NCBI GenBank assembly: GCA_964187785.1
Contig: OZ076409.1
Span: 76,818,001-76,882,000 of the forward strand
DNA: 64,000 nt
Direction: 5' to 3'
Source of the DNA: Amphiscolops sp. MND2022
Taxonomy: Eukaryota
The notes below the pieces were generated by a model. That model saw only the letters and a list, made by a program, of their open reading frames with translations. It ran no database searches and was not told the DNA's origin. This document shows, piece by piece, positions 32,115-64,000 of this stretch; the stretch's first letter is position 1; the number at the start of each line of letters is the position of its first letter. The translations under genes and the position numbers were made by a program.

Positions 32115-32814
32115 TATAGCGGACAGTAAACAGGAAATGAATTTTTTAATACATGTGAGACTTCATACACGTTACATATACACATCTATATATTGAAAAA
32201 TATTAACAGCGTTGCTTAATATACATTGTAACAATTGTTGTGCACATTTTACTTTTTTTAAAATATTTTACAAACAATTATCCAGGCAGTTCCAGGCAGT
32301 GTGCATTTTAAAAAGCCTTGTGGTCGTTTCTAAAAATTTAGCTGCCTTGTAGTAATAAATATTTTGTTGAGTCTGATTCAGCTTCCCAATTGTTCAGCCG
32401 CCCCCTTATTTCAGCTGCCCCTTATTTAAAGCTGCTCTTATTATTTTATGCGCCCAATTCAGCTGCTCCTTTATTAACATTCATCAAAAGCCCCACTCTT
32501 ACCCAGTGCAGGATTAATTATTTATTCGTTTCTTGCACCTGCAGAAGTATCTTCAGAAACCGAAAACTATCACAGCCATAACATCATTCATCAAGCCAAA
32601 TGTAAGTTGCTGTTTGTTACTTAATAATTTTGGTCAGTAAATATCGTTCTTTAAAATTGAGTTTTCATATTCTTATAGACTTTTTTTCTTGTCCTTTTTT
32701 TTAGAAATATCCACTAGTCATTTTTAAAAACAAAATATATCCATTTACCCCAACAATCGCCCTGCGCATCGAAAGTTGAAACGAATTCAAATCTAGTAAA
32801 AAGCGATTGTTGAA
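32115..32814 (+). repeat. 5' LTR of element 1 (700 bp)
   Basis: Matches 44175-44874 with two substitutions seen (32721/44781 and 32812/44872). Contains a TCCAGGCAGT tandem, CAGCTG-CCCTTATT repeats (~32395-32475) and a TATTTAAA TATA-like box near 32424. Confidence 0.95.
32600..32607 (+). promoter_or_regulatory. Candidate major splice donor AT|GTAAGT in the LTR of element 1
   Basis: Consensus GTAAGT at 32602-32607, preceded by AT and downstream of the TATA-like box. Compatible with three AG|G acceptors (see findings). Confidence 0.65.
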
Positions 32815-32815
32815 A

Positions 32816-32833
32816 TGGTGACAAGGGTGGGAT
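32816..32833 (+). promoter_or_regulatory. Primer-binding site of element 1 (Leu-type tRNA-like)
   Basis: TGGTGACAAGGGTGGGAT lies 1 nt after the LTR. TGG-T plus a GTGGG-AT T-arm complement fits a Leu-type (class II) tRNA 3' end. The exact isoacceptor is not determined. Confidence 0.8.
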
Positions 32834-33222
32834 ATTTGTAAAAAGAGAAGTTTTTTTACAAAAAAAAAATTTTAAAGTAACTTAGAACCCCCATCAAAAC
32901 ATTCTTAGTCCTAGACCCGATCCAAAAATTTTTTTTTGAAATGTGCCATTTCCTGGTTCGCCAGTGTTGCCCATAAGATTCCCAATCCGGACATGGTCCG
33001 TGCCTAGTTTTCCAGCTCAATGCTGTGTCTTTCCGCTTCGGCGTGTCTCAGGCTTTAAAATGGCACATTTGACCCAATGCCCTTAAGTTTTAAGAAGTTA
33101 CACGGTAAGTGCTTGTCATAAAACAAACAGTAGCCAATTTTTTGTAACATTTCTATCAAAATAGTTCCGTTTTCTTTTTGATAACCTAAATTCTAATAAC
33201 CGCCGCGAGTTTTTTTGTTGAT

Positions 33223-33492
33223 ATGCCTTGTGCTCACAATACGCATTCTCACCTACCGTTGTACGTTTTTCCCCAACGACCGCTTCGACCATCAAGTCCT
33301 CCGCCCTCTTACAGCGAAACACGTGAAAGACCGATATTCACGCCCTGTTTTTTTAGTTTTCTACTCTTGATCCTCCGTTTTGCGCTTCTCTTGACCGTTT
33401 TAGCCCTTTGTGCGATGTCGTACGAAATCAACAAGATAAATATAACTTGTAAAGCACTTCAAACCCAAAGAGTGGACTATACGTCTCTGTAG
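33223..33492 (+). CDS. ORF A: 89-aa single-pass membrane protein with PPSY motif, in the leader of element 1
   Basis: ATG start, PSSPPPSY motif, hydrophobic FFSFLLLILRFALLLTVLALCAM helix, and an NIT sequon downstream of the helix. Confidence 0.45.
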   Translation: MPCAHNTHSHLPLYVFPQRPLRPSSPPPSYSETRERPIFTPCFFSFLLLILRFALLLTVLALCAMSYEINKINITCKALQTQRVDYTSL

Positions 33493-33502
33493 GAGCGGCC
33501 TA

Positions 33503-33901
33503 ATGTATACTTTTAGCATACCTGTTTCCGTTTTGTCAAACACACCGCCTCAAAACTTCGTTATTCCTTGCTACTTCTGCCAAGTGAAACTTTTCAAAAT
33601 TCCATTATCGCATCAACCAGAACGTCGTTTTACGGCACATGAACTGTCGATTCATTTGCGTCTTGAGGCTATCCACAATTGGCAACATCGAAACGTTTGT
33701 TCAACTTTCCCGTATGGTCGTGTTGATAACAATGCAAGTGTAAAAGCTTCCTGTGCGTCCTTTTTCCCTCAATTATCCAATATTTGGGCTTCTCATATTC
33801 AATTTCTAGCAATACACGTAACGAATCCATTCTTTTTGGTCTATCCCGACTGCAAACCACCTAGTCTCAATTTTGGTCCGCTGCGAATGGATCGCATGTG
33901 A
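33503..33901 (+). CDS. ORF B: 132-aa Cys/His-rich protein upstream of gag
   Basis: ATG start, CYFC...HELSIH...HNWQH...C, and an in-phase splice acceptor TCTCTGTAG|G at 33492/33493. Confidence 0.5.
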   Translation: MYTFSIPVSVLSNTPPQNFVIPCYFCQVKLFKIPLSHQPERRFTAHELSIHLRLEAIHNWQHRNVCSTFPYGRVDNNASVKASCASFFPQLSNIWASHIQFLAIHVTNPFFLVYPDCKPPSLNFGPLRMDRM

Positions 33902-33942
33902 AACGTTCTAGACCTAACGTAGACTTTAAGCGTTCAAATACA

Positions 33943-35163
33943 ATGAGCACTCAACCAAGCACCCCCACAACGGCCACCTCGACAGCGGTAACCAATACCA
34001 CTACAACCCCAGTTACTAGTGGTGGTGCAAGTAGCTCCCAAGCACCAGCACAAGCACCTACCGTGGGTTCTACAACTCCTAACACTAGTACAACCCCAAC
34101 AGCTTCCTTTTTCACTCTGCCTGGCGGTAGACAAAACCCAACAAGTGTTCCATACATAGCCCCGCTTCCGTCATGTCTGATGCCAGAGTCTTTCACAGGA
34201 AAAGGTGATTTCGAAGATTACCTGCAACAATTTAACACAGCAGCACTTCTCTCAGGCTGGTATTCGAACGCACACGATAACAGACCACATTATTTTGCGT
34301 TGCGATTGAGAGAAAATGCTTTGCATTTCTACACTACGTTGTCTCCATCACAACAAACTAACTTCGATATGCTCGTTGACGCGTTCCGCCAGAATTACAC
34401 AACTAATGGCGATATTCTGAAAGCAAGATTGAAAGCCGCGAAGCAGCAACCCAACCAAGATATTTCATCTTTCCTATGTGACGTTCGGACGCTGGCGCGT
34501 CGTGCATATCGGGATCATCCTGCTATGATTGATCCGGTAGTTCTGACGTGCTTCATTGAAGGGTTAAGCGACAAAACGCTTCGATGGGAGCTCCGAAAAG
34601 CCAAGCTAGCCACAGCGGATGATGCTTTGTCCTTGGCTATGGAGCTGAATTCGTTCCTGGAGATTGAGAACGGAAACCCCCAAGCCGCTCAAACAGTTAA
34701 CCGAGTTAGTACTTCTTCTGAAGCGGAGCCATCAGCGTCCAAAATTATGGCTGATTTTGTTCGATCATTACAAACTGAACTTCAGTCGTCAACGTATCGG
34801 TCCAATAATGATTTCCATCAACGAGGAGACACAAAATCATCAAACAGAAATGATCACTCGAGATCGCAGAGTAATGATTCCAATCGGAGTGGCCAGTCAG
34901 TACGATTTCAGTCGTCACAAGGACGCGAACGACCAAATAACGCAGGCAGATCTGACAAAACACAAAAACAACAGTATCGCCAAGATTCCCCCCATCCCAA
35001 GAAACAAGGCAACAATAACAACACGCAAAACAATCGGAAGCCGTGCGAGCGTTGCACACGCAAAAATCATACAACGAAGGAGTGCAAAGCTTGTTTCAAT
35101 TGTTTGAGAGTCGGTCATTTCCAGAATGAATGCAAGGCTCCCAAAAGGGAACATTTAAACTAG
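33943..35163 (+). CDS. gag: Gag of element 1 (capsid plus two CCHC zinc knuckles)
   Basis: ATG at 33943 in ACAATGA context, capsid motif PESFTGKGDFEDYLQQF...GW, and knuckles CERCTRKNHTTKEC and CFNCLRVGHFQNEC. Confidence 0.95.
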   Translation: MSTQPSTPTTATSTAVTNTTTTPVTSGGASSSQAPAQAPTVGSTTPNTSTTPTASFFTLPGGRQNPTSVPYIAPLPSCLMPESFTGKGDFEDYLQQFNTAALLSGWYSNAHDNRPHYFALRLRENALHFYTTLSPSQQTNFDMLVDAFRQNYTTNGDILKARLKAAKQQPNQDISSFLCDVRTLARRAYRDHPAMIDPVVLTCFIEGLSDKTLRWELRKAKLATADDALSLAMELNSFLEIENGNPQAAQTVNRVSTSSEAEPSASKIMADFVRSLQTELQSSTYRSNNDFHQRGDTKSSNRNDHSRSQSNDSNRSGQSVRFQSSQGRERPNNAGRSDKTQKQQYRQDSPHPKKQGNNNNTQNNRKPCERCTRKNHTTKECKACFNCLRVGHFQNECKAPKREHLN

Positions 35164-38100
35164 AAATGTCTACCCTAGCGGGTCACAGCGCAGACAAGAC
35201 CACAAACCGAGGCCCACAAATTCAGACTCTTAACTCTGTGGTGGATCACAGAAGTGTATTCGTCCAATTATCCATTTTTAATACGGTGATTGAGGCTGTG
35301 TGTGATAGTGGAGCAAGTGTGTCTTGCCTGAGTTCTGATGCATTTGGGAAATTGAAGAACGGGAAGAATTTAGAGCTAAAACCGTCAGACACGAAGCTTG
35401 TAGCAGCCAACAAACAACCTATAGTAACATGCGGCATTGTGCAACTACCTTTGCAAATCGGTCCGAGACATTACGAACATTCGTTTCACGTTCTGGAGCA
35501 AGCAGAAGCTGACTGTCTACTCGGCTTAGACTTCCTCAAAACTCATAAATGCGACCCGTTGTTTTCCCAAGATATTCTGCGTCTGGATGAAAAGACGACA
35601 GTCCCCCTGTATCATCGTCAGCTCACAGATGCTAAGACAACTGTGTTCAGGGTGGTGGTGTCCGAGACAGTTTCGGTACCACCACGACATACAATGATTG
35701 TGCCAGCGCACATCAAGGATTGGAAACGCCCATTGAATGAGGGTGTAGCAATTTTCGAGCCGCACGAACGGTTCGATGGCTCAAAAGAAGCAGTGGCACC
35801 AAGTATTTTGTTCAACTTTGCTGAGGAAAACATCCCGGTGACGATCGAAAATTCTGGAGAAGAGCCACTGATCTTGTATGAGAAAACAACTTTGGGTACT
35901 TCAGAAGCAATCCCTGATTTACCCATACAAAACGTTGTAACCGAAACAAAAAGCTTGAAGTCTAAAATAGACGAAAAGGACGAATCGTACGATTTGAAAA
36001 ATGTAGTGGATGGAGTTGATCCGGAAATTCCATTCAAAATAAAACAGAAATTCGCAGAACTTGTTTACGAATTCGAAGATGTGTTTTCGCAAAACCAATG
36101 GGACATTGGTCGTTGCGAAGCTACAACACACAAAATAAACGTATACCCCGGATCAAAGCCGATTAAAATTCCGAATCGCAGAATGCCCCTCCACTATAAA
36201 CAGGATCTCCAAGAGAAATTAGACGCGTTCCTGGACAAGAAGTTAATAGCTCCTTGTCACAGCCCTTACAGTGCACCCGCCATGCTAGTCCCGAAGAAAA
36301 ACGGAAAACTCCGCCTCGTCATTGACTACAGACAATTGAATAGTCAAACAATCAAGTCTTGTTGGCCAATCCCTTCGATTGAAGAAATTTTTGACACTCT
36401 AGATGGAAGTTCAGTCTTTTCCACTATAGACATGAGTTGGGGATTTTATCAGCTGCCCTTAGACGAATCAAGTCAAGATTATACTGCTTTCAGCACACCT
36501 TTTGGTTCCTTCAAATGGCTTGTAATGCCGATGGGACTCACAAACAGTCCACCGACGTTCCAAAATTTAATGGAAATCGTTTTGGCGAAACTTATCTGGA
36601 AAACAACAGTCCCCTACCTTGATGATTGTATCATCTTTGCCGCTTCCCCGGAGGAACACTTAGAACGAGTCAGGGAACTTCTAGGCAGATTTAGACAAGC
36701 CAACTTGAAAATAAACCCCCTAAAATGCGAGTTTTTCCGCACCAAAGTCCACTTCTTGGGCCATGTCATCAGCAAAGAAGGCCTTCAAGTTGATCCCACA
36801 AAAATTGCAGCCGTTAAAGAGTTTCCGGTCCCAATTAACCAGACCCAGGTGAAGTCATTCTTGGGCCTTTGTTCCTACTATAGACGTTACATCAAAAACT
36901 TCGCTGAAATCGCTCGTCCCTTGCATAAAGCGAGTGAAACCAACTCGCCTTTTAAGTGGACAACTGAGGCAGAGCAAGCGTTTGAAGATCTAAAAGCACG
37001 ACTCCTCACAACACCAATTTTAGCCTTTCCAACAATGGAAGATCCTTTCATCCTCTACACGGATGCCAGCCAACTAGCAATGGGAGCCGTTCTAGCCCAA
37101 GTACAAAATGGCCAGGAACGTGCTATTTGCTATGCATCAAAGGCATTCTCCAAATCCCAATCAAAGTACTCAGCGACGAAACGAGAACTTCTCGCAATGG
37201 TCCATTTCACTCGGTACTTCCGACATTACCTACTCGGTAGAAAATTCAAAATTGTCACAGACCACAGTGCACTTCGCTGGTTACACAATTTCAAGGACCC
37301 CGACGGTCTCATTGCACGTTGGATTGAAAAACTAGCAGCTTTTGATTACGAAGTGCAACATAGACCAGGCAAATCCATCGGACATGCCGACAGTCTGTCC
37401 AGAATACCAACTGAATCCGTCCAATTAACGCAAGAATGCCGAACAGGAGTCCCAGGTGCAACAAAGACGAAGAATTGCAACAATGACGAGGAATGGCCCA
37501 ACGCACAATCTAACTACAGTATTCACCTATTGCCTAGAGATACAGCATCAATACCACTCCAAGCTATCATTGAACTCAAGGAAAAAGCTAATAATCACAG
37601 CAAAGTTAAAACCGGCGAACTTCTCGAACACGAGCAACCACAAGAAAAGCCTCTACAAGAAGAACTAGTCATTACAGAAACAGGCATTGTCAAGTATCGC
37701 GAGGTGAAGGGCGATTTGTTCAGTTCTTCGGAGTCCCTAGCTCACTGTATCTCAGCTGATTTTAAAATGAGTTCTGGAATAGCCCGATCATTCAAAAGGA
37801 AGTTCCCAGCACAGTATCCAGAGGACTTATCAAAGCAAACTGTGCCACTTTGGGTACAACCATTACCTGGTGACGGCCGTTTCCTGTATCACTTGCTGAC
37901 TAAGGAACGTTACTACCAAAAGCCAACATATACTTCACTTCGAGCTTCTCTGGAACACATGCGTAGCCATGCTGAAACGAACGATGTCCTAAAGATTAGT
38001 ATGCCTCAAATAGGCTGTGGAAATGATAAACTTGACTGGGATTTGGTTCGCAGACTCATCCGAGAAGTCTTTGACGGATCCAATGTATGTATAACTATTT

Positions 38101-52878: not shown

Positions 52879-54219
52879 ATGTCACTCGATCAACGCACCC
52901 CGAAGTCGGTGTGGGACGACGAGTCTGACCACGAGCAGTCCGGAAGTCAAAGTCATGGCCTCCTGCAAGAAGCATCCTCGAGACAAAATCAATCTGGCAG
53001 CAATGCGAGCAGCCCGTCGAAGGATGCTGAGCTGGAGCAACTACGCAGTCAAGTGAAGGACCTTTCCGTTGCTATGGAAGGTTTGCAGAAAGGAAAGCGG
53101 AGGCTAAATTTCGCTACTAGATCGTCCGGTGTGAGTCCAAGTCAGCGCCCACCGACTGCAGAACGAGAACCCCAAGTGCTGCTGGCCTTGCATCCTGAAC
53201 GATTCCCCTCAAAGGACTACCCCAGCTGGCGAATGTGGCAGCAGCACTTCCGCAGCGTGTGTCGCGCCAACGGTTGGAGTGATGCGAAAAGCCTGCAGGT
53301 CCTAGCAGCTAGTTTGAGTGGCTGGGCTACTGATGAATTCCACTCTGCACCTGAGAGATGCCAGAATGATCTCGCTGAGATGTTGCAATTTCTGAAAGGC
53401 CGCTTGTCACCTTATCGGAATGAACGCACCTCACGGGGCGAGTTCAAAAACTTGTATCAAGGGGCCGAGGAGACATTGAGCGAATTCGCCCGCAAGATTC
53501 GGAATGTGGGGAATCGCGCTTATCCCGAGGTGCCAGTGAACCAAAGAGATCAGTTTCTACGCGAGCAGTTCATTGAAGGCTTGTACGACATGGACGTACA
53601 AGTAGAGTTGTTGAAGGAACCCGAACAGGACTTTTTGGAGACCTTGACACGTGCCCAACAGCTTGACTCAATCCGCCGAACCGCGCGAAACAACCCAAGA
53701 CGCCGAACGCGAGGTCACGTTCGGTTCGTCGCAGGAGACGAAACCCAAGAAGAGAGCTGCCACCGACTGCCAGAGAAAAGCAATGCCGTTGCTAGATCCC
53801 CGACACCCCCTGGTGGGAAGAGCCTGGCCTCTGAGGTTCCCATTGGTGAGATCTTGGCGGCAATTCAGACGACGCTTGAGTTGCAGCATAAGCCAACTAC
53901 TTACAACCAGTCGCTGATGGAGAAAACCAACACGAGGCTGGACAGGCTGACCGAGCACACCGTGAATAACAACGAAAAACTGACTTCAGCGATCGAAACT
54001 CTAACCGATGCTATCAAGACGCTGACAACCCAGTCGACGAAGCAACTATACGATCCAAACAAAGATCGCGGGAGATACGGATGGAAAGGAAATGACGTGT
54101 CCCCAGCGCGAGACCGCCCTCCACTTAATATGGCGACAGTCGATTGTTATCAATGCCACCAAAAGGGACATTTTGCTCGGGACTGTCCCAATCAGCAGCA
54201 GAGTGGTCATTTAAACTAG
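52879..54219 (+). CDS. gag: Gag of element 2 (capsid plus one CCHC knuckle)
   Basis: W..HF..VCRANGW...L...L.G.A...F capsid pattern, QGAEETLSEFARKIR, EQFIEGL, CYQCHQKGHFARDC, ending HLN*. Confidence 0.95.
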   Translation: MSLDQRTPKSVWDDESDHEQSGSQSHGLLQEASSRQNQSGSNASSPSKDAELEQLRSQVKDLSVAMEGLQKGKRRLNFATRSSGVSPSQRPPTAEREPQVLLALHPERFPSKDYPSWRMWQQHFRSVCRANGWSDAKSLQVLAASLSGWATDEFHSAPERCQNDLAEMLQFLKGRLSPYRNERTSRGEFKNLYQGAEETLSEFARKIRNVGNRAYPEVPVNQRDQFLREQFIEGLYDMDVQVELLKEPEQDFLETLTRAQQLDSIRRTARNNPRRRTRGHVRFVAGDETQEESCHRLPEKSNAVARSPTPPGGKSLASEVPIGEILAAIQTTLELQHKPTTYNQSLMEKTNTRLDRLTEHTVNNNEKLTSAIETLTDAIKTLTTQSTKQLYDPNKDRGRYGWKGNDVSPARDRPPLNMATVDCYQCHQKGHFARDCPNQQQSGHLN

Positions 54220-57200: not shown

Positions 57201-59456
57201 CAGCGATTGATGGAGGAAAATCACGTTTACAAAGTGAGCATGCAGAGAATTGGTAGCCAGCCCCCCGACTTCCTAAACTGGTGGCAAACCCGTGGGCTCA
57301 TCTCGGAAGTGTTTACCGGTAGCCCTATGCTGGTCTGGGTGCACTATGGCGGTCCCGAAGGTAACGATACCACGGAACTGTGCAGTGCCAGCCAAGAGGT
57401 GCCCACACCCACTATGACCGGAAATTCAACCCTTGGTACAGAAAGCCACGAACAGGCGCCTCCAACTGCCGACACAATTAGTTGGGTCCGCGTTCCCTGT
57501 GATGTGCGAAGCGCCCAAAGAGACGACCCCCATATCGGCATCATTTTCAAGATGATCACTCTGGAGCATGATGATGCTGACCTCGTGGACCTCGGAGAAG
57601 TCCCGTTCACGAAAGCTGAAGCAATTGGATACGGGGATGAAGTGGTTACCCTTTGGGGGCAATGGCCACAACTTACCATCCGCAAAGGGATTCTGTACCG
57701 ATACTGGCAAGAATCTTCAGACGCTGAAAAAGTGTTTCAACTGGTGCTGCCCCTCGTGCACCAGAAAGATGTTCTTGACCAATTGCATGACTCTCCCGTT
57801 AGTGGGGGTCACTTTGCTGTCGAAAAGACCCTCAACAGGATCCGACAACGGTTCTGGTGGCCGCAAATGCGTCAACACGTGGAGAAGAAGGTGGAACTTT
57901 GTATTCCGTGCGCCGCGAGACGCACCGCAGGAAAGCGACGAACTGCTGAGCTACAACCTATGCAAGTGGGGACGAGGTTCAACACAGTTGCTGCTGACAT
58001 CTTGGGTCCCGTGACCAAAGGGGGAAAAACGAAATGCAAATACGTTCTGGCAATGACAGACCTCTTCACAAAATACGTCGTGGCTGTACCTCTGAAGGAC
58101 CTAGACGCTAAAGAGGTAGCCAACAGTCTAGTGGAGAACTGGGTCCTACGATTTGGCGTGCCCGACGTCTTACACACTGACCAAGGCACAAACTTCAACA
58201 GTGACCTGATGAAGGAGGTTTGCAGTCTTCTCCAAATCGACAAAAGTTGGACAACTGCATATCACCCTGAGGGAAACGGTCAAGTGGAGAGGTTCAACAG
58301 AGTGATTGCCGATACCATCTCGAAATACTGTGCGGAAAACCCAAGAACATGGGACGAATTTCTGCCCTATGTGACTTTTGTCTACAACACCACGGTCCAC
58401 AAGACGACGAGAGCAACCCCTTTCAGTCCGATATATGGACAGGAAAGCCAGTACCCGATTGATTTGTTTTATCCCAAGCCAATAGACTACGAATACAAGG
58501 AGGGGGCTGATTTTGCTGCTCAACTTCACGAGACGTTCCGCGAAGTCCAAGCTAACGCTAGGCAAGTTTTGGGAAGCACGCAGCGCAGGCGGAAAGACCT
58601 CTATCACAAAAAAGTGTATGGAGAACCCTACAAGGAGGGGGACAAAGTGTGGCTGTTCTCCCCTCACAAAGCTAAATCGAGGAAGTTCTTCCTTCCCTGG
58701 GAGGGACCGTATGTGGTAGGAGAACGACTGAATGAGGTAATCTACAAGGTCTGGAAGGAGTCTAAGCAACTGAAGTGGTTCACCGTCCACTTCAACCGAC
58801 TCAAACCCTACAAGTGCGCCCAACCGGAACTACGACAGTTCAGCAGACCCCGGCCTCATGCCGAGGAAGTTGCTTTCGACTACCGTCTTTGGGGGGACTC
58901 ACTCCTAGAGCTAGACACGCCTTCACCATCGCCCCCCACCAGAAAAACGAATGCTGCTCCGCCAGTTCCCAAGGAAGGACAACCAACGGAGCCAGAGGGG
59001 TTGGAGTTGACCATCAGTGTACCGGACATTGACAACGAACAACCCCCACCAATCTTCACTCCTTCGACCCCCGTCCCTGGTAGCGCCCTGCCCCCTTACA
59101 CTTTCATAGACGACCCTTCCCCCCCACTGCATGCAATAGTTGCAGATAGCCATCAAGCTGACGAAAATCCTGGGGAGCATGGATCAGCGACACCGCTAGT
59201 GCTTGAACAAACAAAACCACAACATCAAGCGGAGCAGAGCAGGTGCTCACTGCATGAGTCACCACCGCAAACGCAAGGAAGCGAGGAGCGCGACGACGAA
59301 CGACACGGGAATGTCCCAAGTCAAGGGACAAAGGCGAGCGACCGAGAGCTCGGAGAGAACGGAGCTGGCGAGGAGGAGAGTCAGCGTGTGGATCCAGTGA
59401 TGAGCCGGCCGAAGCGAATGCGCTTTCGTCCGGTACGCTATGGGATCGACGACTAG
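54144..59456 (+). CDS. pol: Pol of element 2: protease, long spacer, RT, RNase H, degenerate macrodomain, integrase with GPY/F, acidic Pro-rich tail
   Basis: LIDTGAS, FLDD, DTDAS, HDSPVSGGH...CIPC, ADILGP/TDQG/VER, and PWEGPY. Uninterrupted over 1770 codons. Confidence 0.97.
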   Translation: MLSMPPKGTFCSGLSQSAAEWSFKLVRAEQSSGVPTSAQQKSDCNPTPATTSTQPPCSDFPNATPTILSKQSGRPIVFEKAAAPEREEIEQRLCTQIEVKIPQGPSLWVPLMVENEKKWSLIDTGASSNLLCKKLQEQVGGTLEPYGGVVVDPKGEPLPIIGVTRVRLNVAGLVTTEKFLVMDGLNPDVTVGLRFLLEKGCQLDWQHCCLWLEGGKRRAPMTVAGPLMPNDPDPILTLYATSNPTSPTVKYQPNQPQSASPEPVLGTTEAGNENPSCIEGTPVSVGNPPQDAEDFRGSFISETGFRKQREIPWSDVRDGKVRFRGRAKSVVSARRWASTVRSVSPKGTQRRSSIPLCFRLPETFESSSTADMEAQQTQLAADVETILQLTAPDADESMRQRLRPLIEEFRDVFALTDEELGSTNLTTHRIDTGDALPIKRPPHRMAPGKIPEMKAEVQDMLKRGIIRPSKSPYSSPIVIVKKKDGANRFCVDYRKLNEITRKDAFPIPRIEQTLDALEGSSFFSTLDLASGYWQVPVATEDIPKTAFVTPDGGLYEYVRMPFGLCNAPATFQRLMNEIYGDALYKFVIVFLDDVLVYSKTEDSHFEQLRETFTRLRKANLKLKPKKCNLFQRKVGYLGHVIDQAGSRPDPGKLDALRTWPQPNTVTGVRSFLGFCSYYRKFIKGFAEIARPLHELTRKGLKFTWLPEHTAAFNELKDRLLKEPTLNFPDFNQPFVIDTDASDNNLGAVLSNVVNGEERPLAYISRVLSKTETMYSTTKREALAVVQALKWFRSYILGLKVIIRTDHASLRWMFRQNADGMTFRMVQKLQEYDYTIVHRPGAKHGNADGLSRREDPKENWKEGELEALLGHCPEPTTYEEALEEVRDFLKVVKELQDARSLDSPHEPPEEPDSGACRTIQASSFKVDPVMELDDWFYDSGRSMVQCVTADFRLITVHPSDPVHDPFLETLIQGLKRQPMPGDTLAVRDMESPRWRFYMITKKFAWEKTSFRTLRECLSQLQRLMEENHVYKVSMQRIGSQPPDFLNWWQTRGLISEVFTGSPMLVWVHYGGPEGNDTTELCSASQEVPTPTMTGNSTLGTESHEQAPPTADTISWVRVPCDVRSAQRDDPHIGIIFKMITLEHDDADLVDLGEVPFTKAEAIGYGDEVVTLWGQWPQLTIRKGILYRYWQESSDAEKVFQLVLPLVHQKDVLDQLHDSPVSGGHFAVEKTLNRIRQRFWWPQMRQHVEKKVELCIPCAARRTAGKRRTAELQPMQVGTRFNTVAADILGPVTKGGKTKCKYVLAMTDLFTKYVVAVPLKDLDAKEVANSLVENWVLRFGVPDVLHTDQGTNFNSDLMKEVCSLLQIDKSWTTAYHPEGNGQVERFNRVIADTISKYCAENPRTWDEFLPYVTFVYNTTVHKTTRATPFSPIYGQESQYPIDLFYPKPIDYEYKEGADFAAQLHETFREVQANARQVLGSTQRRRKDLYHKKVYGEPYKEGDKVWLFSPHKAKSRKFFLPWEGPYVVGERLNEVIYKVWKESKQLKWFTVHFNRLKPYKCAQPELRQFSRPRPHAEEVAFDYRLWGDSLLELDTPSPSPPTRKTNAAPPVPKEGQPTEPEGLELTISVPDIDNEQPPPIFTPSTPVPGSALPPYTFIDDPSPPLHAIVADSHQADENPGEHGSATPLVLEQTKPQHQAEQSRCSLHESPPQTQGSEERDDERHGNVPSQGTKASDRELGENGAGEEESQRVDPVMSRPKRMRFRPVRYGIDD
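54210..54216 (+). promoter_or_regulatory. -1 frameshift heptamer U_UUA_AAC, element 2
   Basis: CAT TTA AAC TAG, with pol in the -1 frame. Confidence 0.85.
56925..57345 (+). other. Divergent TARG1-like macrodomain within Pol of element 2
   Basis: SMVQCVTADF...PGDTLAVRD....RFYMITKKFAWEKTSFRTLRECLSQLQ..M....VYKVSMQRIG....DFLNW...GLISEVF, at the same RH-IN position as in element 1. Confidence 0.7.
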
Positions 59457-59706
59457 GAGTGGAAAACCACTCCGACCTCGACTGTAGTCTGCTTGCAGGA
59501 GGCAGACGACAAAGAGGAAGCAAATCCTGCGGCACGAGTGTCCCACCGTGCCACGCTTTCTCCTGCGTTCCGCTGAGCACGGAAAACGAGAACTACCGAA
59601 ACAGTCCTTCGCCTGCTTAGCTGAACAATGAAGAAAGCATCGCCATCAGTTGCCTTGTTTCACGAATAGCTTCTCCACTGCCATTAAACCTGCTACCACT
59701 CGTGCG

Positions 59707-62025
59707 ATGCAGTTGATCGTCCTATGTTGCTGCCTTTCCTTCCTTTGGCATCCCATCGTCAACGAAGACCTGGAAGACTGGGATGTTCATGACTTATCTT
59801 TTAAACAATCTGAACGCATGGCTTCCACCTTCTCCAACAGCACCCACTCAGTGTCTGGAGCCGCTTTCACCCCCGAAGGCACAGTGATCCTGACAACGTC
59901 CATGAAGGCAACCTGGGTGTACGTGCCATTTCCAGAAGTGCCAGCATTGAGTGGGGACTTCGTCAAAGCCATGGTGAAGAAATTCGACTCCGCCATCTCT
60001 GGTACCTTTGGCGCACCCGATCGAGTCTGTAAGGACACGGGGACTTTGGGAGAGACTTTCCCGCTCTTCTATGGACGAGCCCTGGGCGAACTCTGGCGGA
60101 GCCTCAACAGGTTCTCAGCGGATCTGGATGCCATTCGACGAAGTGCTACAGTTTTTGTCAACAACACTGGCCACACTGAGCTGTCAAGAGCAAGGCGAGT
60201 GGTGCCTCACCTGGTAGCAGCCGCAACAGCCACGATTTTTGAACCCGTTCTACGGAAAGTGGGATGTGCTGTTTTGTCCCCAATTGGTTTCTGCAGCGAC
60301 CCCAGGGCACAAAGAATTGAAACCCTGTACGCCCAACTGCGCCATCTCGAGGGCCGAGTCCGCCAACTGGAGGAGGGTGCATGGCTGACCCATGTCGTGG
60401 AACCCCCGAGGGACGCAGAACGATGGGTTGAACCCGTGCTCTCCCTGAATCGCTCCATCAATGAGGGAAAGTTGTTGACCCTCGTTCCTTGCATGGAGGA
60501 CCTTGTGAAAAGGATGGACCGTTACCTCATTTGTGCACCCAACCACAAAACGAGTGAGTTTGAGATGAGTGCCCTCCACTTGGGACTCTATGACAACATA
60601 ACATCCACGATCGGCGCCATGGCTACGGAGATTGACCAGAGAAGAGTAGCGCTTCAAAGTTTTGGATCCTTGCTTCACGATGCCCTGGGATCCCTGGTTC
60701 ATGGGTTTCTGCCAACCACATTAATTCCCCCAGACGCGCTGGTGCAAATTCTGCGTCAGATCCCAAGAGGAACCCTGGTTGAGGCCATTCCGCGGAATCA
60801 ACTATCCGCCTACTACAGTTTCGAGATAGTACGGGAAACGTACATTTCGAATAGTGGTCTGCACATTCTGCTGGAAATTCCGCTGCACGCATCAACGGGC
60901 ATGCATTCGGTCATGAGAGCAACACCTTTGCCGCAACCAATACCGGGGGGTCGAGGTACCGCCACCCAATACAAATTACGGAAAAACTTCTTACTTCTGT
61001 CGTGGGATCGCACCAACTTTGCAGAGGTCAGTGAGGAAAAACTGTTGGACCATTGTCAAGGCACTGGCCGGCTGAAGTTATGCAAGAAGCCCTTCGCCGC
61101 TACTGTCTCTCAACGGACTACTTGCTTGACTGGACTCTACTTCAACTTGGTGTCAGTTGTCTTGAAACTATGCGACCAAGAGGTAATCCCCCTGCCTCAG
61201 CAACCGCAGGCAGAATACTTGTACGACTCAACGTACCTGCTCACTTCGGCGGATGGAAATTTCCTGATGCAAAACTTCACGGAAGGAAGGAAAACCCAGA
61301 AAATGAACGGATGCCAGAGTTGTTTGGTGAAACCGTCATGTAACGGGCGAATCCAACTGCCTAGCGGTGGGCTTGTGTTGCGACCCGACCCCGAGACGTG
61401 CCGGAACGACGCTGAAGGAACGGTCAACATTCTGCCTGCCCCACAGCTGCGTGCCATTTTCGGAGCCTTGGCAGAGATCGCCCAAGAAGTGCCTTACTCC
61501 CTGGTGAGTGACCTGCAGGGTGAGATCCTGGACCACGTCCGCCTCAACCTTGCCCAGCTGAACGACGCCGATCTCACTGATGCTGCCATTGGAAGTGTGG
61601 TCGAGCCATTCATCGACCAAGTGCGGTTGGCCCATGGTGTCGGTATGAAGTGGCTCATTCGGCGAGTAGTCCTTCCAGCAGTTTCGGGAGTCTGCGCTCT
61701 GACCCTGACCGCGGGATGCCTCTACCTGAGTCGACAACCAATCCGTCACGCCCTGCAGCGCGGGGTGAGGTCAGTGCGCCGGAGGAACGAGAGACGAATC
61801 ATCCGGCAGAAGCGACAACAACTGCAGGACGAAGCTCGCGCCGATGCGGAAGCGGTGCCTCGAATACACATGGGGGTGCGCCAAATTGCAGCGGAGAGTG
61901 AACGACCAGCGACAAATGAGGCGACAATGGCAGAGCTCCATGACCCAACACACACATCGGTGAAGGTACCCCGAAGAAAGGGTGGAGAGCAGGGCGAGAG
62001 ATGCAGAGCAGACGAGAAGCCGTGA
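59707..62025 (+). CDS. env: Env of element 2, homologous to Env of element 1
   Basis: ATG at 59707 with signal MQLIVLCCCLSFLWHP, furin RARR (60187-60198) followed by VVPHLVAAATATIF, the same Cys pattern as Env 1, and TM VVLPAVSGVCALTLTAGCLYL. Confidence 0.9.
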   Translation: MQLIVLCCCLSFLWHPIVNEDLEDWDVHDLSFKQSERMASTFSNSTHSVSGAAFTPEGTVILTTSMKATWVYVPFPEVPALSGDFVKAMVKKFDSAISGTFGAPDRVCKDTGTLGETFPLFYGRALGELWRSLNRFSADLDAIRRSATVFVNNTGHTELSRARRVVPHLVAAATATIFEPVLRKVGCAVLSPIGFCSDPRAQRIETLYAQLRHLEGRVRQLEEGAWLTHVVEPPRDAERWVEPVLSLNRSINEGKLLTLVPCMEDLVKRMDRYLICAPNHKTSEFEMSALHLGLYDNITSTIGAMATEIDQRRVALQSFGSLLHDALGSLVHGFLPTTLIPPDALVQILRQIPRGTLVEAIPRNQLSAYYSFEIVRETYISNSGLHILLEIPLHASTGMHSVMRATPLPQPIPGGRGTATQYKLRKNFLLLSWDRTNFAEVSEEKLLDHCQGTGRLKLCKKPFAATVSQRTTCLTGLYFNLVSVVLKLCDQEVIPLPQQPQAEYLYDSTYLLTSADGNFLMQNFTEGRKTQKMNGCQSCLVKPSCNGRIQLPSGGLVLRPDPETCRNDAEGTVNILPAPQLRAIFGALAEIAQEVPYSLVSDLQGEILDHVRLNLAQLNDADLTDAAIGSVVEPFIDQVRLAHGVGMKWLIRRVVLPAVSGVCALTLTAGCLYLSRQPIRHALQRGVRSVRRRNERRIIRQKRQQLQDEARADAEAVPRIHMGVRQIAAESERPATNEATMAELHDPTHTSVKVPRRKGGEQGERCRADEKP

Positions 62026-62590
62026 CCCGCAACTGGAGATATGGTGGCCGTTAGTAAGCCTGCCAATCTTCAACAACTTTTTTTTTTACAAAACTCTTTG
62101 CATGTTAATTACGAAACTCTTTGCATGTTAACCCTTGTAGAACCCCCCTTCTGCCTCACTATTGCTTTCAAACATATTGATTTCCAGGAAAAAGAAACTG
62201 ATGGACCATTTTTTTTTTAAAAAAAAAAATACATATACGTATATGAATATTCAAAAACCTCGCACTTTCGAAATCGCCGGCGAATTTTTCTTGATATCCG
62301 AAAAAAATTTGTGCATCATATTTTTTTTCTTGTCTATTTCTTTTATTGTTTTTTTTTTAAAAAAAACAGTCCAGGCAAAAATTTCAATGCCTGCACAACA
62401 AGTATGACTCATACGAACTCAAGATATATTGGATATTGGACACGTGATTGTAAACGAACAAAACGGCGAGCTTGAATTCTTAATGAGCGAGATGGAAGCT
62501 AACTGAGAGCATTTTAGTATACTTGAAGCGGAATGCATTTCTGGCTAATCCCCCGACGTTTACTTGTATACGCAGCTGCAGCTGCAAATT

Positions 62591-62711
62591 CACGTCACGC
62601 GTGAGTGCGATGACTCATGCTGTTTAACGAACTGTCGCTCGCACTACTCGTAATCACCGCGCTCTCCGGCCATAAATATTTTCTCCGCAACCGTAATCCG
62701 TCGCTTTCATT
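62591..62711 (+). promoter_or_regulatory. Candidate internal promoter for the post-env ORF
   Basis: CACGTCA (62591), AP-1 TGACTCA (62611-62617), CATAAATA (62671-62678) and Inr-like TCATT (62707-62711). Confidence 0.4.
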
Positions 62712-62783
62712 CCAGTCAAAATTTTGTTTCTATTTTTTTCTCAAACATCTTCGCCTCCGATAAATAAAGAAGAAAAAACTACA

Positions 62784-63344
62784 ATGTCCACCGCTCAGAA
62801 CAACCGCCCAGCTATCCAATCAATCCTCCCTCTCGATATCCTGCCCTGCACCGTCAAACTGGGTGATAACTGGATCCGGATCCACGAGTTCGCAGCGCCA
62901 ACAAGCGACGCCGACGCTGAGGCGTACATACTAATGGACAAGTGGGAAAATGGACGGTGGAAATCAGACCCTCAAACTTTGAGCATCCACGATGAATTCT
63001 TATGGGAATTAGCAGCTCTGCTGTTGGAGGTCAGCCTCCGGAAAGGCGACCGGGTGCGGATGTGTTTGGCCTTTGTCCAGTTTCTGACACAGCCCAGCGT
63101 GCCAGCGAACGACGACCATCCGGAGTCCGCGGGCAACCTCCCACAGTTTGGGCTAACAAGCTCAGTAGGGAGGGCGCTGATGGGTGCGAACAACCAGCAG
63201 GATCAAGCACGCAGCGCATGGATGCGGGAGTGGCTCGCACTGTTAGCCCCGCGCAATGAGGAGCCGCAGCCGCCACCCTATGCCGCAGAGCCGGGCGAAA
63301 ACGAAACTGTGGTGACAAGGAACCCGGACCCGCCATCCCGCTAA
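62784..63344 (+). CDS. Accessory ORF of element 2 (186 aa; possible PC4-like ssDNA-binding fold; C-terminal PPPY)
   Basis: ACAATG start, GC-rich open frame between AT-rich flanks, and VKLGDNWIRIHEF...YILMDKWENGRWKS...LSI..EFLWELAALL. The fold call is inference. Confidence 0.65.
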   Translation: MSTAQNNRPAIQSILPLDILPCTVKLGDNWIRIHEFAAPTSDADAEAYILMDKWENGRWKSDPQTLSIHDEFLWELAALLLEVSLRKGDRVRMCLAFVQFLTQPSVPANDDHPESAGNLPQFGLTSSVGRALMGANNQQDQARSAWMREWLALLAPRNEEPQPPPYAAEPGENETVVTRNPDPPSR

Positions 63345-63683
63345 GTCTTCCGGGTTTTTGTTGAGTTATTTTTTTTGGTTTTTTTTTGTTATACAAAACT
63401 GTTGTCCATCAGTTTTTTGTTACCCTTACCCTGTGGCTAAAACCACCTTGCGTGGCTCGAAACGCAGTGTGACACGGCTTCCTGGAATAGATACCACTGT
63501 GATTGTTGATGTTCTACTATTAACATTTTTTTTGGAAATCTTCTATTGTTTTGTTTTCATACGCAATCTCAACCCCAACCTCAGTCTTTGAGTCCTATGA
63601 CCTGCCCCTACCCCCCAATCTCAGCTCACCCATTTTGATAGGATGTCGATACCTCTGAAACTATCCAGGAGTATAGTTAGTCT

Positions 63684-63695
63684 GGAAGGGAGGAA
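63684..63695 (+). promoter_or_regulatory. Polypurine tract of element 2
   Basis: GGAAGGGAGGAA immediately precedes TGTAGAAAAG. Confidence 0.85.
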
Positions 63696-64000
63696 TGTAG
63701 AAAAGTTCTACAGGCATGAAAATTAGGACGCATTGTATTCCTTTTCTCCGCGCGCGTCGCGGCAGCGGCATTGTATTATTTAGTCACAAAGCGTAGCACA
63801 GTACTTGCATAAAGCACGTGACGAATACCGAGCATAAAAGTTGAACAATATATGAATACAATCACAGCATACTCACAGAGGACGACTCAAAATTAATAAA
63901 AGGAACATACTAACGATCGGCAACGTATACTATTTTTCCTTCAATCCCCTAACCGCCATACAATGATATTCCCCTCGCGACTCCAGATATCTACAAGCTA
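63696..64000 (+). repeat. 3' LTR of element 2 (first 305 bp; truncated by window end)
   Basis: Matches 48949-49253 (offset 14747) with one substitution seen, and includes the last 71 bp of the antisense ORF. Confidence 0.95.

What the first reader, a model, noticed from the sequence alone, without database searches (positions are those of the whole stretch)
32115..64000. Two complex env-bearing Gypsy retroviruses carrying host-modification accessory modules (macrodomain, J-domain, OTU-like)
Standard Metaviridae carry gag-pol with or without env. These two related but distinct elements add ADP-ribose-eraser, Hsp70 co-chaperone, putative deubiquitinase-like, PPxY-bearing and small membrane ORFs. 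The same module types are used by unrelated viruses against host defences (coronavirus macrodomains, nairovirus OTU, polyomavirus J-domain). This suggests a lineage of invertebrate endogenous retrovirus-like elements with a complex accessory gene set. I cannot confirm novelty without a search.
Basis: partly seen in the sequence, partly recalled or inferred. Interest (0 to 1): 0.9.

Follow-up and report, generated by a model that had tools for sequence, protein, structure and literature searches.

The report
Gypsy retroelements carrying macrodomain, J-domain genes
Two young, intact envelope-bearing Ty3/gypsy retroelements sit side by side; one lineage carries an ADP-ribose-removing macrodomain inside its polymerase, an Hsp70 co-chaperone (J-domain) gene and two small conserved genes, a gene set I found described nowhere, while the claimed OTU-like gene is not supported.

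Summary
The window holds two full LTR elements on the + strand. E1 runs 32112-44874. E2 starts at 48949 and runs past the window end; its LTRs are 3.48 kb. Both have gag, pol (PR-RT-RH-IN, in the -1 frame after a TTTAAAC heptamer) and a class-I, F-type env-like ORF.

**Confirmed**
- E1 pol has a TARG1/OARD1-type macrodomain in frame between RNase H and integrase (PDB E 7e-34). Both catalytic-dyad positions are kept.
- E2 has a diverged copy at the same place that lacks the glycine loops.
- E1 has a 3' ORF with an HPD J-domain.
- E1 has a small PPxY-plus-transmembrane ORF and a CxxC..H..H ORF upstream of gag.
- The whole E1 order recurs in diverged relatives from two ENA assemblies, with dN/dS of 0.08-0.43.

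**Not supported**
- The OTU-like module. The only candidate is an antisense ORF inside E2's LTR, with no OTU signal.

Env-bearing gypsy elements are already catalogued, so this is a new variant of a known kind. The functions (reversal of host ADP-ribosylation, Hsp70 recruitment, NEDD4/ESCRT recruitment) are inferred, not shown. The host is an unidentified metazoan.

The parts
32112..32815 (+). E1 5' LTR (704 nt). CTAG at 32111-32114 is repeated at 44875-44878, a possible 4-bp target duplication with an ambiguous boundary.
32816..32833 (+). E1 primer-binding site candidate (starts TGG directly after the LTR). The tRNA was not identified.
33223..33492 (+). E1 ORF89: a small protein with invariant LPLY and PPPxY motifs followed by one hydrophobic helix. 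Conserved in L007, L002 (89 aa) and L003 (83 aa).
33503..33901 (+). E1 ORF132: conserved accessory ORF with an invariant PC[YF]FCQ...H...H pattern (possible zinc knuckle). No Pfam or PDB match.
   Evidence: dN/dS 0.20 against L007
33898..35163 (+). E1 gag (421 aa; Retrotrans_gag plus CCHC knuckle). Ends CAT TTA AAC TAG, i.e. the slippery heptamer TTTAAAC directly before the stop.
35130..40070 (+). E1 pol (1646 aa, -1 frame relative to gag). PR 35253-35552, RT 36288-36770, RNase H 36957-37343, macrodomain 37692-38102, IN 38397-39452, then an unassigned 200-aa tail.
37692..38102 (+). E1 TARG1/OARD1-type (ALC1-like class) macrodomain, in frame inside pol between RNase H and integrase.
   Evidence: PDB 2eee/4j5q E 7e-34; dyad positions invariant; relatives
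40230..42497 (+). E1 env-like ORF (755 aa from the first start-like codon). The frame is open from the pol stop at 40071 and encodes a signal-peptide-like stretch with no ATG of its own. Has an RPRR cleavage motif followed by an Ala/Gly-rich fusion-peptide-like stretch, and a C-terminal membrane anchor.
42565..42920 (.). 79-nt tandem array (4.4 copies) between env and the J-domain ORF.
42989..44134 (+). E1 J-domain ORF (381 aa): conserved N-terminal domain, coiled coil, J-domain with HPD (43856-44041), and a CCG...C..C tail.
44172..44874 (+). E1 3' LTR (703 nt), preceded by the purine tract GGGGGAGGG at 44163-44171.
48949..52428 (+). E2 5' LTR (3,480 nt; TG..CA ends; ATTTC duplication at 48944-48948). 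Contains a 181-nt tandem repeat (50271-50609) and the antisense ORF.
49183..50049 (-). Antisense ORF (283-288 aa) inside E2's LTR. It has a weak Integrase_H2C2-like N-terminus, no OTU signal, and truncated homologues elsewhere.
52430..52446 (+). E2 primer-binding site candidate (TGGCGC...).
52879..54219 (+). E2 gag (446 aa, CCHC knuckle). Ends with the same TTTAAAC heptamer directly before its stop codon.
54144..59456 (+). E2 pol (up to 1770 aa, -1 frame). PR-like 54459-54746, RT 55581-56066, RNase H 56253-56636, macro-like 56946-57344, IN 57756-58808.
56946..57344 (+). E2 diverged macrodomain homologue at the same pol position. The Lys and Asp dyad positions are kept, the first Gly-rich loop is deleted and the second is changed.
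59650..62025 (+). E2 env-like ORF (772 aa from the ATG at 59707): signal peptide, RARR motif, C-terminal anchor.
62724..63344 (+). E2 3' ORF (186 aa from the ATG at 62784) with PPPY near the C-terminus. No homologue apart from a 99% sister copy.
63696..64000 (+). Start of E2's 3' LTR, cut by the window end (continues to window-equivalent 67172). Preceded by the purine tract GGAAGGGAGGAA.

Best explanation
**What is shown.** The region holds two recently inserted, coding-intact endogenous Ty3/gypsy (Metaviridae) elements of one broad lineage. They carry a class-I, F-type envelope gene, the kind recently called 'ancient errantiviruses'.

Gag-Pol is presumably made by -1 frameshifting at a TTTAAAC heptamer that sits directly before the gag stop. 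The heptamer and the frame relation are shown; the frameshifting itself is inferred.

The E1 lineage has a fixed extended gene order: ORF89 (PPxY plus membrane helix), ORF132 (CxxC..H..H), gag, pol with PR-RT-RH-macrodomain-IN, env, then a J-domain ORF.

**What is inferred.**
- The macrodomain is a captured animal TARG1/OARD1-type ADP-ribosylhydrolase. As part of Pol it would be packaged with the reverse-transcription and integration machinery. There it would remove mono-ADP-ribose that host PARP-type enzymes put on element proteins or nucleic-acid ends.
- The J-domain protein would recruit host Hsp70 through its HPD motif for assembly, uncoating or trafficking.
- ORF89 would recruit NEDD4-type ligases or ESCRT at membranes through PPxY.
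- E2 keeps only a ligand-loop-less macro remnant and has a different 3' ORF.
For: **Anatomy**
- LTRs, primer-binding sites, purine tracts and target duplications.
- Domain order.
- TTTAAAC before the gag stop in 6 of 7 elements, with pol in the -1 frame.

**Env**
- E1 and E2 Env are homologous (E 4e-44).
- Both have an RxRR motif followed by a hydrophobic Ala/Gly-rich stretch and a C-terminal anchor.
- Env of the relatives matches Pfam Baculo_F at E 3.6e-5 and 1.2e-3.
- A profile of five Envs hits PDB 'fusion protein' 9w4c/9w4d at E 5e-4.

**Macrodomain**
- E 7e-34 to human OARD1 structures over about 135 residues.
- The Lys84 and Asp125 equivalents are invariant in five elements (numbering and PMC7050489).
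- It is in frame in pol in at least five diverged lineages.
- It is a monophyletic group in 93% of 30 bootstrap replicates.
- E1 against L002: dN 0.30 with dS saturated.

**J-domain ORF**
- Pfam DnaJ 40 bits against a cut-off of 27.8.
- HPD kept in 8 of 9 homologues that are 34-92% identical.
- dN/dS 0.08 for the J-domain and 0.08 for the N-terminal domain, against L007.

**ORF89 and ORF132**
- Open and alignable in three or four lineages, with invariant motifs.

**Multi-copy and young**
- LTR pairs are 99.2-99.9% identical.
- Clusters at 90% identity hold 25-60 members for E1 gag and pol, and 923 for a related pol.
- An intact E2 sister copy lies at another locus.
Against: - No expression, protein or activity data exist for any ORF.
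- The host species is unknown.
- Both structure predictions failed (pLDDT 35-36), so the Env class rests on weak sequence matches below Pfam's cut-off.
- dS is saturated between lineages, and the only usable close pair for the macrodomain has very few changes (dN/dS 0.43).
- The E1 env frame has no ATG before its signal-peptide-like stretch, so how Env is translated is open.
- E1's target duplication is ambiguous.
- All close relatives come from only two ENA assemblies. No relative of the J-domain ORF was found in JGI metagenomes or IMG/VR.
- TARG1-type enzymes also act on nucleic-acid ends, so the substrate is open, and so is whether the role is counter-defence or housekeeping.
Confidence: 0.72

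Rival explanations
1. The extra ORFs and the macrodomain are passenger sequences: pieces of host genes transduced by chance and carried along without serving the element.
For: LTR elements do pick up host fragments. The macrodomain is about 50% identical to an animal cellular protein. E2's copy has lost its ligand loops. E2's LTR ORF looks like such a decaying passenger.
Against: The same order of six genes is kept in lineages whose pol is only 55-65% identical. The catalytic dyad, HPD and PPxY are invariant or nearly so. dN/dS is 0.08-0.43, comparable to gag, pol and env. The macrodomain (61% identity) is better conserved than the linker before it (44%) and the pol tail (40%).
Confidence: 0.08
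2. The macrodomain serves the element's own replication chemistry rather than countering a host defence. For example, it could process ADP-ribosylated or 2'/3'-modified nucleic-acid ends, bind PARP1-modified chromatin to guide integration, or act merely as an ADP-ribose reader that tethers integrase.
For: It sits directly upstream of the integrase zinc-binding domain. In other gypsy lineages it is fused after integrase instead (P0145, P0221, P0250), which links it to integrase. TARG1 acts on nucleic-acid termini and interacts with PARP1 (PMC7050489). E2 keeps the domain without its glycine loops, which could fit a non-enzymatic role.
Against: The catalytic Lys and Asp are kept in every lineage, which argues for hydrolysis rather than reading alone. 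No data discriminate between substrates.
Confidence: 0.22
3. The antisense ORF in E2's LTR (49183-50049) is a real OTU-like deubiquitinase.
For: The ORF is open (283-288 aa) in both LTRs of E2 and in both LTRs of the sister copy L008. It contains Cys- and His-containing stretches.
Against: No Pfam OTU match even at E up to 10. No PDB match by sequence or by profile. The model has pLDDT 36. Homologues at 47-87% identity are truncated at different points. The only weak match is to an integrase zinc-binding domain (E 9e-4, below the cut-off).
Confidence: 0.04
4. The arrangement is an assembly chimera or a set of nested, unrelated insertions rather than single elements.
For: The source is a metagenome-style long-read assembly (contig names).
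Against: The macrodomain is in frame within one uninterrupted pol ORF. The same order is found on at least six independent contigs from two assemblies. Each element is bounded by matching LTRs.
Confidence: 0.02

Closest known systems
Env-carrying Ty3/gypsy elements of metazoans ('ancient errantiviruses') with F-type Env (Chary & Hayashi, eLife 2026, PMC13524379)
   Same: The gag-pol-env order; multi-copy, near-identical, intact copies; an Env related to the baculovirus/paramyxovirus F type, with a furin-type site and a fusion peptide; a non-insect metazoan host.
   Different: That paper describes the RNase H to integrase 'bridge' as RNase H plus mini or pseudo RNase H domains. Its text does not mention a macrodomain, DnaJ or accessory genes. 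Here the bridge holds a TARG1-type macrodomain and there are three further conserved ORFs.
Human TARG1/OARD1 (C6orf130), ALC1-like class macrodomain hydrolase (PDB 2EEE, 4J5Q)
   Same: About 50% identity over the whole 135-residue domain. Both glycine-rich loops and the Lys84/Asp125 dyad positions are kept in E1.
   Different: TARG1 is a free-standing cellular protein of about 150 aa. Here the domain is fused in frame inside a retroelement Pol. E2's copy lacks the loops.
Teleost epsilon-like endogenous retroviruses with additional macro-domain or CNPase ORFs (Basta et al. 2009, cited in PMC4977317)
   Same: A reverse-transcribing LTR element that has captured a cellular macro domain.
   Different: Those are Retroviridae of vertebrates, and the review describes them as additional open reading frames. 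Here the element is Metaviridae and the domain lies inside Pol. I could not read the original paper, so the macro class there is unknown to me.
Macrodomains of positive-strand RNA viruses (coronavirus nsp3 Mac1, alphavirus nsP3, hepatitis E virus); from general knowledge
   Same: A virus-encoded ADP-ribosylhydrolase embedded in the replicase polyprotein. There it is thought to reverse antiviral PARP modification.
   Different: Those are MacroD-type. This one is of the ALC1/TARG1 type, which uses a Lys-Asp dyad. There is no sequence relationship beyond the fold, and no functional data here.
Viral J-domain proteins (polyomavirus T antigens) and cellular Hsp40s; from general knowledge
   Same: A J-domain with an HPD motif, the part that stimulates the Hsp70 ATPase.
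   Different: Here the J-domain is C-terminal, preceded by a lineage-specific N-terminal domain and a coiled coil, and followed by a Cys motif. Full-length homologues were found only in relatives of this element.
Bdelloid rotifer LTR retrotransposons with captured additional ORFs (Rodriguez, Kenefick & Arkhipova 2017, PMC5408684)
   Same: Ty3/gypsy-like elements that carry extra ORFs beyond gag, pol and env.
   Different: That paper's text contains no macro, DnaJ, OTU or ADP-ribose terms, so the gene set is different.
Membrane-anchored PPxY adaptors (cellular NDFIP proteins, herpesvirus LMP2A) and retroviral PPxY late domains; from general knowledge
   Same: ORF89 has an invariant PPPxY motif just before a single membrane helix.
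   Different: No sequence homology was detected. In retroviruses the late domain is normally part of Gag, not a separate small protein.

Membership tests
Ty3/gypsy (Metaviridae) LTR retroelement | Direct LTRs flanking an internal region, with a primer-binding site after the 5' LTR and a purine tract before the 3' LTR | tested here: met
Ty3/gypsy (Metaviridae) LTR retroelement | Pol domain order PR-RT-RNase H-IN (integrase after RT) | tested here: met
   Pfam hits in that order in both elements
Ty3/gypsy (Metaviridae) LTR retroelement | Gag with capsid-like domain and CCHC zinc knuckle | tested here: met
   E1: Retrotrans_gag above the cut-off, CCHC just below it. E2: CCHC above the cut-off
Ty3/gypsy (Metaviridae) LTR retroelement | Short target-site duplication | tested here: met
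   E2: 5-bp ATTTC. E1: only an ambiguous CTAG
Ty3/gypsy (Metaviridae) LTR retroelement | Placement in an RT/IN phylogeny with reference clades (GyDB, Repbase) | not testable with these tools
   No reference set could be fetched
Env-carrying gypsy with F-type (class I) Env | Third large ORF after pol with signal peptide, internal furin-type site followed by a fusion peptide, and a C-terminal anchor | tested here: met
   E1's signal-peptide-like stretch lacks its own ATG
Env-carrying gypsy with F-type (class I) Env | Detectable homology to baculovirus/paramyxovirus F | tested here: inconclusive
   Baculo_F at 23.0 bits against a cut-off of 24.1 in the L002 Env, and E 1.2e-3 in L003; none in E1 or E2 themselves. 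PDB profile hit to 'fusion protein' 9w4c at E 5e-4
Env-carrying gypsy with F-type (class I) Env | Predicted F-like fold | tested here: inconclusive
   The two-sequence AlphaFold model has pLDDT 35. The deeper alignment was not accepted by the tool
ALC1-like/TARG1 macrodomain hydrolase | Sequence homology over the whole macrodomain | tested here: met
   E1: E 7e-34. E2: E 8e-6, partial
ALC1-like/TARG1 macrodomain hydrolase | Catalytic Lys84 / Asp125 dyad | tested here: met
   Both columns are invariant in E1, L002, L003, L004 and E2. Mapping and PMC7050489
ALC1-like/TARG1 macrodomain hydrolase | Glycine-rich ADP-ribose-binding loops | tested here: met
   Met in E1, L002, L003 and L004. Not met in E2, where the first loop is deleted and the second is altered
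ALC1-like/TARG1 macrodomain hydrolase | ADP-ribosylhydrolase activity | not testable with these tools
   No biochemical data
J-domain protein (Hsp40 co-chaperone) | J-domain above the Pfam gathering score | tested here: met
   40.0 bits against 27.8. L002 homologue 30.8 bits
J-domain protein (Hsp40 co-chaperone) | HPD tripeptide between helices II and III | tested here: met
   Present in E1 and in 8 of 9 aligned homologues
J-domain protein (Hsp40 co-chaperone) | Stimulation of the Hsp70 ATPase | not testable with these tools
   No biochemical data
OTU deubiquitinase | Match to OTU or related papain-like family models | tested here: not met
   No such hit at E up to 10 for the LTR antisense ORF or the small ORFs, nor at E up to 1 for the pol spacers and tails
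OTU deubiquitinase | Similarity to solved OTU structures, or an OTU-like fold | tested here: not met
   No PDB match by sequence or by profile. The model is too poor for a fold search
PPxY late-domain / NEDD4-recruiting motif | PPxY motif conserved across relatives | tested here: met
   Invariant PPPxY in ORF89 of four lineages. E2's ORF186 has PPPY, seen only in one 99% copy
PPxY late-domain / NEDD4-recruiting motif | Binding to WW-domain ligases | not testable with these tools
   No interaction data

The most novel reading that the evidence does not exclude
This would be a lineage of 'complex metaviruses': env-bearing Ty3/gypsy elements of an invertebrate that have assembled a retrovirus-like accessory gene set. 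Its centre is a Pol-embedded TARG1-type ADP-ribosylhydrolase that reverses host ADP-ribosylation of the reverse-transcription or integration complex or of its nucleic acids. TARG1-type macrodomains are fused to gypsy Pol at three or more different positions in different lineages (12 of the 150 best representative clusters). That recurrence would point to ADP-ribosylation as a widespread, so far unrecognised restriction mechanism against retroelements in animals.
Probability: 0.3. Interest if true: 0.85.

Novelty: new variant of a known kind. Interest (0 to 1): 0.66.

Why it matters
Env-bearing gypsy elements are now known to be ancient and widespread, but they are described as simple gag-pol-env units. 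This lineage keeps four extra functional modules under selection. One of them is an ADP-ribose eraser built into the polymerase, the same strategy RNA viruses use against antiviral PARPs.

If the inferred roles hold, retroelements and host ADP-ribosylation, Hsp70 and NEDD4/ESCRT systems are in direct conflict in invertebrates. Accessory-gene complexity would then not be a speciality of vertebrate retroviruses.

The repeated, positionally different macrodomain-Pol fusions give a concrete handle for comparative genomics: look for co-distribution with host PARP repertoires.

Tried and rejected
- **OTU-like module.** I searched the LTR antisense ORF, all small ORFs, the PR-RT spacers and the pol tails against Pfam at permissive thresholds, and against PDB by sequence and by profile. 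I also modelled the ORF. Nothing pointed to OTU.
- **Structure route for Env.** I did not send those rows by any other route. The permitted two-sequence alignment gave pLDDT 35. I ran no fold search, because both models were too poor to be meaningful.
- **Host identification.**
  - No tRNA or Rfam hit in the window or loci.
  - No Pfam hit in ORFs outside the elements.
  - No source names for any relative.
  - No paper cites the ENA accessions.
- **tRNA used by the primer-binding sites.** Not determined.
- **ORF132 as the N-terminal part of Gag.** Rejected: no similarity to the longer L003 Gag, and L003 has its own separate homologue.
- **E2's 3' ORF as a diverged J-domain ORF.** Rejected: no similarity.
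- **dN/dS between lineages.** dS is saturated, so only dN is informative. My first dN/dS run used too low an alignment threshold and is void.
- **E2 against its sister copy.** Too similar (98.7%) to say anything about selection.
- **J-domain ORF relatives.** None in JGI metagenomes or IMG/VR.
- **N-terminal domain of the J-domain ORF, and ORF132.** No PDB relatives by profile.
- **Basta et al. 2009.** The paper could not be read.

Full report
**1. What is in the window**

ORF listing and base composition show two G+C-richer blocks at about 33.5-44.1 kb and 52.9-63.3 kb. Each has a run of long + strand ORFs.

- **E1.** Direct-repeat analysis gives LTRs at 32112-32815 and 44172-44874, 704/703 nt and 99.7% identical.
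- **E2.** A second pair starts at 48949 and 63696, and the second copy is cut by the window end.
- **Source contig.** The window comes from ENA assembly ERZ25074608, contig ctg185293 (471,551 bp).
- **E2 LTRs in full.** With the downstream DNA of that contig (L006), E2's LTRs turn out to be 3,480 nt long. The 5' LTR is 48949-52428 and the 3' LTR is 63696 to window-equivalent 67172. They are 99.2% identical, with TG..CA ends and a 5-bp target duplication ATTTC. The finding's end coordinate therefore truncates E2, which is about 18.2 kb.
- **E1 target duplication.** It is ambiguous. CTAG occurs at 32111-32114 and again right after the 3' LTR. The same pattern is seen in two relatives.
- **Other landmarks.** Primer-binding-site-like TGG... 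sequences follow both 5' LTRs and purine tracts precede both 3' LTRs.
- **Breaks.** I counted no breaks in the main genes of either window element. All are single open frames.

**2. Core genes**

Pfam gives the following.
- Gag: capsid-like domain and/or CCHC knuckle.
- Pol: PR, RT, RNase H, then integrase (zinc-binding, core and C-terminal domains). This is the Ty3/gypsy order.

In both elements pol lies in the -1 frame relative to gag, and gag ends ...CAT TTA AAC TAG. The classical slippery heptamer TTTAAAC therefore sits directly before the gag stop in E1, E2 and four of five relatives. Frameshifting itself is inferred.

E1 and E2 are related but distant: pol is 33% identical over 1,219 residues, and env 24% identical with E 4e-44.

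**3. Env**

- Both third ORFs (755 and 791 codons) have an RxRR motif followed by an Ala/Gly-rich hydrophobic stretch, long helical regions, a Cys-rich beta region and a C-terminal anchor.
- Neither window Env matches a Pfam family.
- The Envs of the relatives L002 and L003 match Baculo_F, at 23.0 bits (just under the cut-off of 24.1) and at E 1.2e-3.
- A profile of five Envs hits PDB 'fusion protein' entries 9w4c/9w4d at E 5e-4.
- Together with the literature (section 9), this makes an F-type class-I Env the best reading, but the evidence is weak.
- In E1 and its sister copy L001 the env frame is the same as the pol frame and stays open from the pol stop codon onward. It encodes a signal-peptide-like stretch with no ATG. 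L002, L003 and E2 have an ATG plus a signal peptide. How E1 Env is initiated is open: a spliced leader, a non-AUG start or something else.

**4. Macrodomain**

- The about 350 residues between RNase H and integrase in E1 pol match human OARD1/TARG1 structures (2eee, 4j5q) at E 7e-34 over about 135 residues, at about 50% identity. Pfam's generic Macro model sees it only weakly, at E 0.005.
- I mapped the published catalytic dyad (Lys84 with Asp/Glu125; PMC7050489) through the tool's alignment. Both positions are invariant in E1, L002, L003, L004 and E2.
- E1 and the three relatives also keep both glycine-rich loops.
- E2 has a homologous domain at the same pol position (E 4e-14 to E1; E 8e-6 to OARD1). 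Its first loop is deleted and its second is changed, so I infer that ligand binding is probably impaired.
- A word-indexed search limited to pol-length proteins found four clusters with this macrodomain, all from two ENA assemblies.
- A full HMMER search of 1.84 billion representative proteins found 3,912 homologues, mostly short cellular OARD1-like proteins. Among the best 150, twelve carry retroelement context:

| Arrangement | Clusters |
|---|---|
| RNase H then macro | four fragments |
| macro then integrase | four fragments |
| integrase then macro, at the C-terminus | P0145, P0221, P0250 |
| protease plus macro | P0114 |

- In a neighbour-joining tree, the macrodomains of E1, L002, L003 and L004 form one clade with five pol-flagged fragments (four of the RH-macro or macro-IN type, plus the PR-macro P0114) and four short unflagged hits. 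It is found in 93% of 30 bootstrap replicates. The integrase-macro forms fall elsewhere with poor support. This suggests one old capture in this lineage and probably others elsewhere.

**5. J-domain ORF (E1 only)**

- ORF 42989-44134 matches Pfam DnaJ above the cut-off (40 bits against 27.8) and many solved J-domains, and it has the HPD motif.
- Homologues form 11 clusters, all from ENA, at 38-99% identity.
- Nine aligned sequences share an N-terminal domain, a coiled coil, the J-domain (HPD in 8 of 9) and a CCG...C..C tail.
- No relatives were found in JGI metagenomes or IMG/VR.
- The N-terminal domain has no PDB relative.
- E2's 3' ORF (186 aa from its ATG, with a PPPY motif) is unrelated and has no known relative except a 99% sister copy.

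**6. Small upstream ORFs (E1 lineage)**

- ORF89 (33223-33492) has invariant LPLY and PPPxY motifs followed by one hydrophobic helix. It is open in L007, L002 (89 aa) and L003 (83 aa), at 94%, 46% and 32% identity.
- ORF132 (33503-33901) has an invariant PC[YF]FCQ...H...H pattern. It is present in L001, L007, L002 (52% identical) and L003 (28% identical). It has no Pfam or PDB match.
- E2's small hydrophobic ORFs between the LTR and gag are seen only in the near-identical sister copy and remain unsupported.

**7. Relatives, copy number and selection**

- The full order (ORF89, ORF132, gag, pol with macrodomain, env, J-domain ORF) recurs in L002 (same assembly) and L003 (assembly ERZ26859043). 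Their pol is 65% and 55% identical to E1's. Their LTR pairs are 99.9% identical.
L007 has gag in two and pol in three. L004 has pol in three and env in two.
- Clusters at 90% identity hold 60 (E1 pol), 25 (E1 gag), 8 (J-domain ORF) and 923 (L004-type pol) members.
- E2 has an intact sister copy at another locus, 98.7% identical.
- dN/dS (Nei-Gojobori) for E1 against L007, single-piece rows only:

| Region | dN/dS |
|---|---|
| ORF132 | 0.20 |
| PR-RT-RH | 0.20 |
| macrodomain | 0.43 (very few changes) |
| integrase | 0.27 |
| env | 0.10 |
| J-ORF N-terminal domain | 0.08 |
| J-ORF coiled coil | 0.21 |
| J-domain | 0.08 |

- Between E1 and L002, dS is saturated. dN is 0.30 for the macrodomain, 0.16 for RT, 0.70 for the pol tail and 0.71 for the linker before the macrodomain.
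- So the accessory modules are constrained about as much as the core genes.

**8. The OTU-like claim**

The only plausible candidate is an antisense ORF of 283-288 aa at 49183-50049. It lies inside E2's LTR and so occurs in both LTRs.
- It has a weak integrase zinc-binding-like N-terminus (E 9e-4, below the cut-off).
- It has no OTU or other protease match at E up to 10.
- It has no PDB match by sequence or by profile.
- Its model has pLDDT 36.
- Its few homologues (47-87% identical) are truncated at different points.
- The pol spacers and tails have no hidden domain either.

The claim is not supported.

**9. Comparison with what is known**

- Chary & Hayashi (eLife 2026, PMC13524379) catalogued intact, multi-copy env-carrying Ty3/gypsy elements across metazoan phyla, with F-type or gB-type Env. 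They describe the RNase H-integrase bridge as RNase H plus mini or pseudo RNase H domains. Their text has no mention of macro, DnaJ, OTU or accessory genes.
- Macro-domain ORFs are reported in teleost epsilon-like ERVs (Basta et al. 2009, as cited in PMC4977317). I could not read the original.
- Rotifer LTR elements with extra ORFs do not include these domains.
- Full-text searches combining macrodomain or J-domain with LTR-retrotransposon terms found nothing relevant.
- Within the limits of this library, the backbone is known and the accessory set appears undescribed. Repbase and Dfam could not be checked.

**10. Mechanism**

Shown: the sequences, domain homologies, motif conservation, gene order, copy number and constraint.

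Inferred:
- The macrodomain acts as a hydrolase carried in Pol.
- Its substrate is host-added ADP-ribose on element proteins or nucleic-acid ends.
- The J-domain protein recruits Hsp70.
- ORF89 recruits NEDD4/ESCRT.
- Env and the 3' ORF are expressed through splicing.

An alternative is that the macrodomain serves integration or nucleic-acid-end chemistry rather than counter-defence. Its repeated fusion next to integrase fits this.

Noticed in passing
window 48949-52428 (and the 3' copy from 63696): E2's LTRs are unusually long (3,480 nt). They carry an open antisense ORF of 283-288 aa (49183-50049) and a 181-nt tandem duplication (50271-50609). The ORF is open in all four LTR copies seen, but homologues elsewhere are truncated.
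   Followed up: yes
window 42565-42920: A 79-nt tandem array (4.4 copies, 86% matches) fills most of the gap between E1 env and the J-domain ORF. It could be a regulatory or RNA element for expression of the 3' ORF.
   Followed up: no
window 40071-40229; L001 14939-15097: In E1 and its sister copy the env frame is the same as the pol frame and stays open from the pol stop codon. It encodes a signal-peptide-like stretch with no ATG. L002, L003 and E2 have an ATG.
   Followed up: partly
window 35149-35163 and 54205-54219; gag ends in L001, L002, L004, L008: The heptamer TTTAAAC sits directly before the gag stop codon in six of seven elements, with pol in the -1 frame. L003 has GGAAAAC instead.
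   Followed up: yes
proteins P0145, P0221, P0250, P0114 (one search hits): Other Ty3/gypsy Pol proteins in public data carry a TARG1-type macrodomain at other positions: after integrase at the C-terminus, or next to protease. These are probably separate captures.
   Followed up: partly
L003 17233-17604: The L003 relative has one more ORF (123 aa, no Pfam match) between env and its J-domain ORF.
   Followed up: no
L008 1-2200: A BEL/Pao retrotransposon (Pao_retrotransp, rve, DUF5641) lies next to the E2 sister copy, which fits a metazoan host.
   Followed up: no
window 46560-46737 and 44875-48948: The 4-kb spacer between E1 and E2 is AT-rich and has no Pfam-matching ORF. It contains a 67-nt direct repeat (two copies, 90% identical).
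   Followed up: no
window 20001-24000: A strongly T-rich stretch on the + strand (AT skew about -0.23). The ORFs there have no Pfam match.
   Followed up: no
window 2020-2215: A run of 196 N (gap or mask). It was left as it is.
   Followed up: no
window 32111-32114 / 44875-44878; L002 and L003 LTR ends: In E1, L002 and L003 the four bases that follow the 3' LTR (CTAG, GTAG, GTAT) are the same as the four bases at the 5' boundary, part of which also matches the start of the 3' LTR. The exact LTR start and the target duplication therefore cannot be separated.
   Followed up: partly
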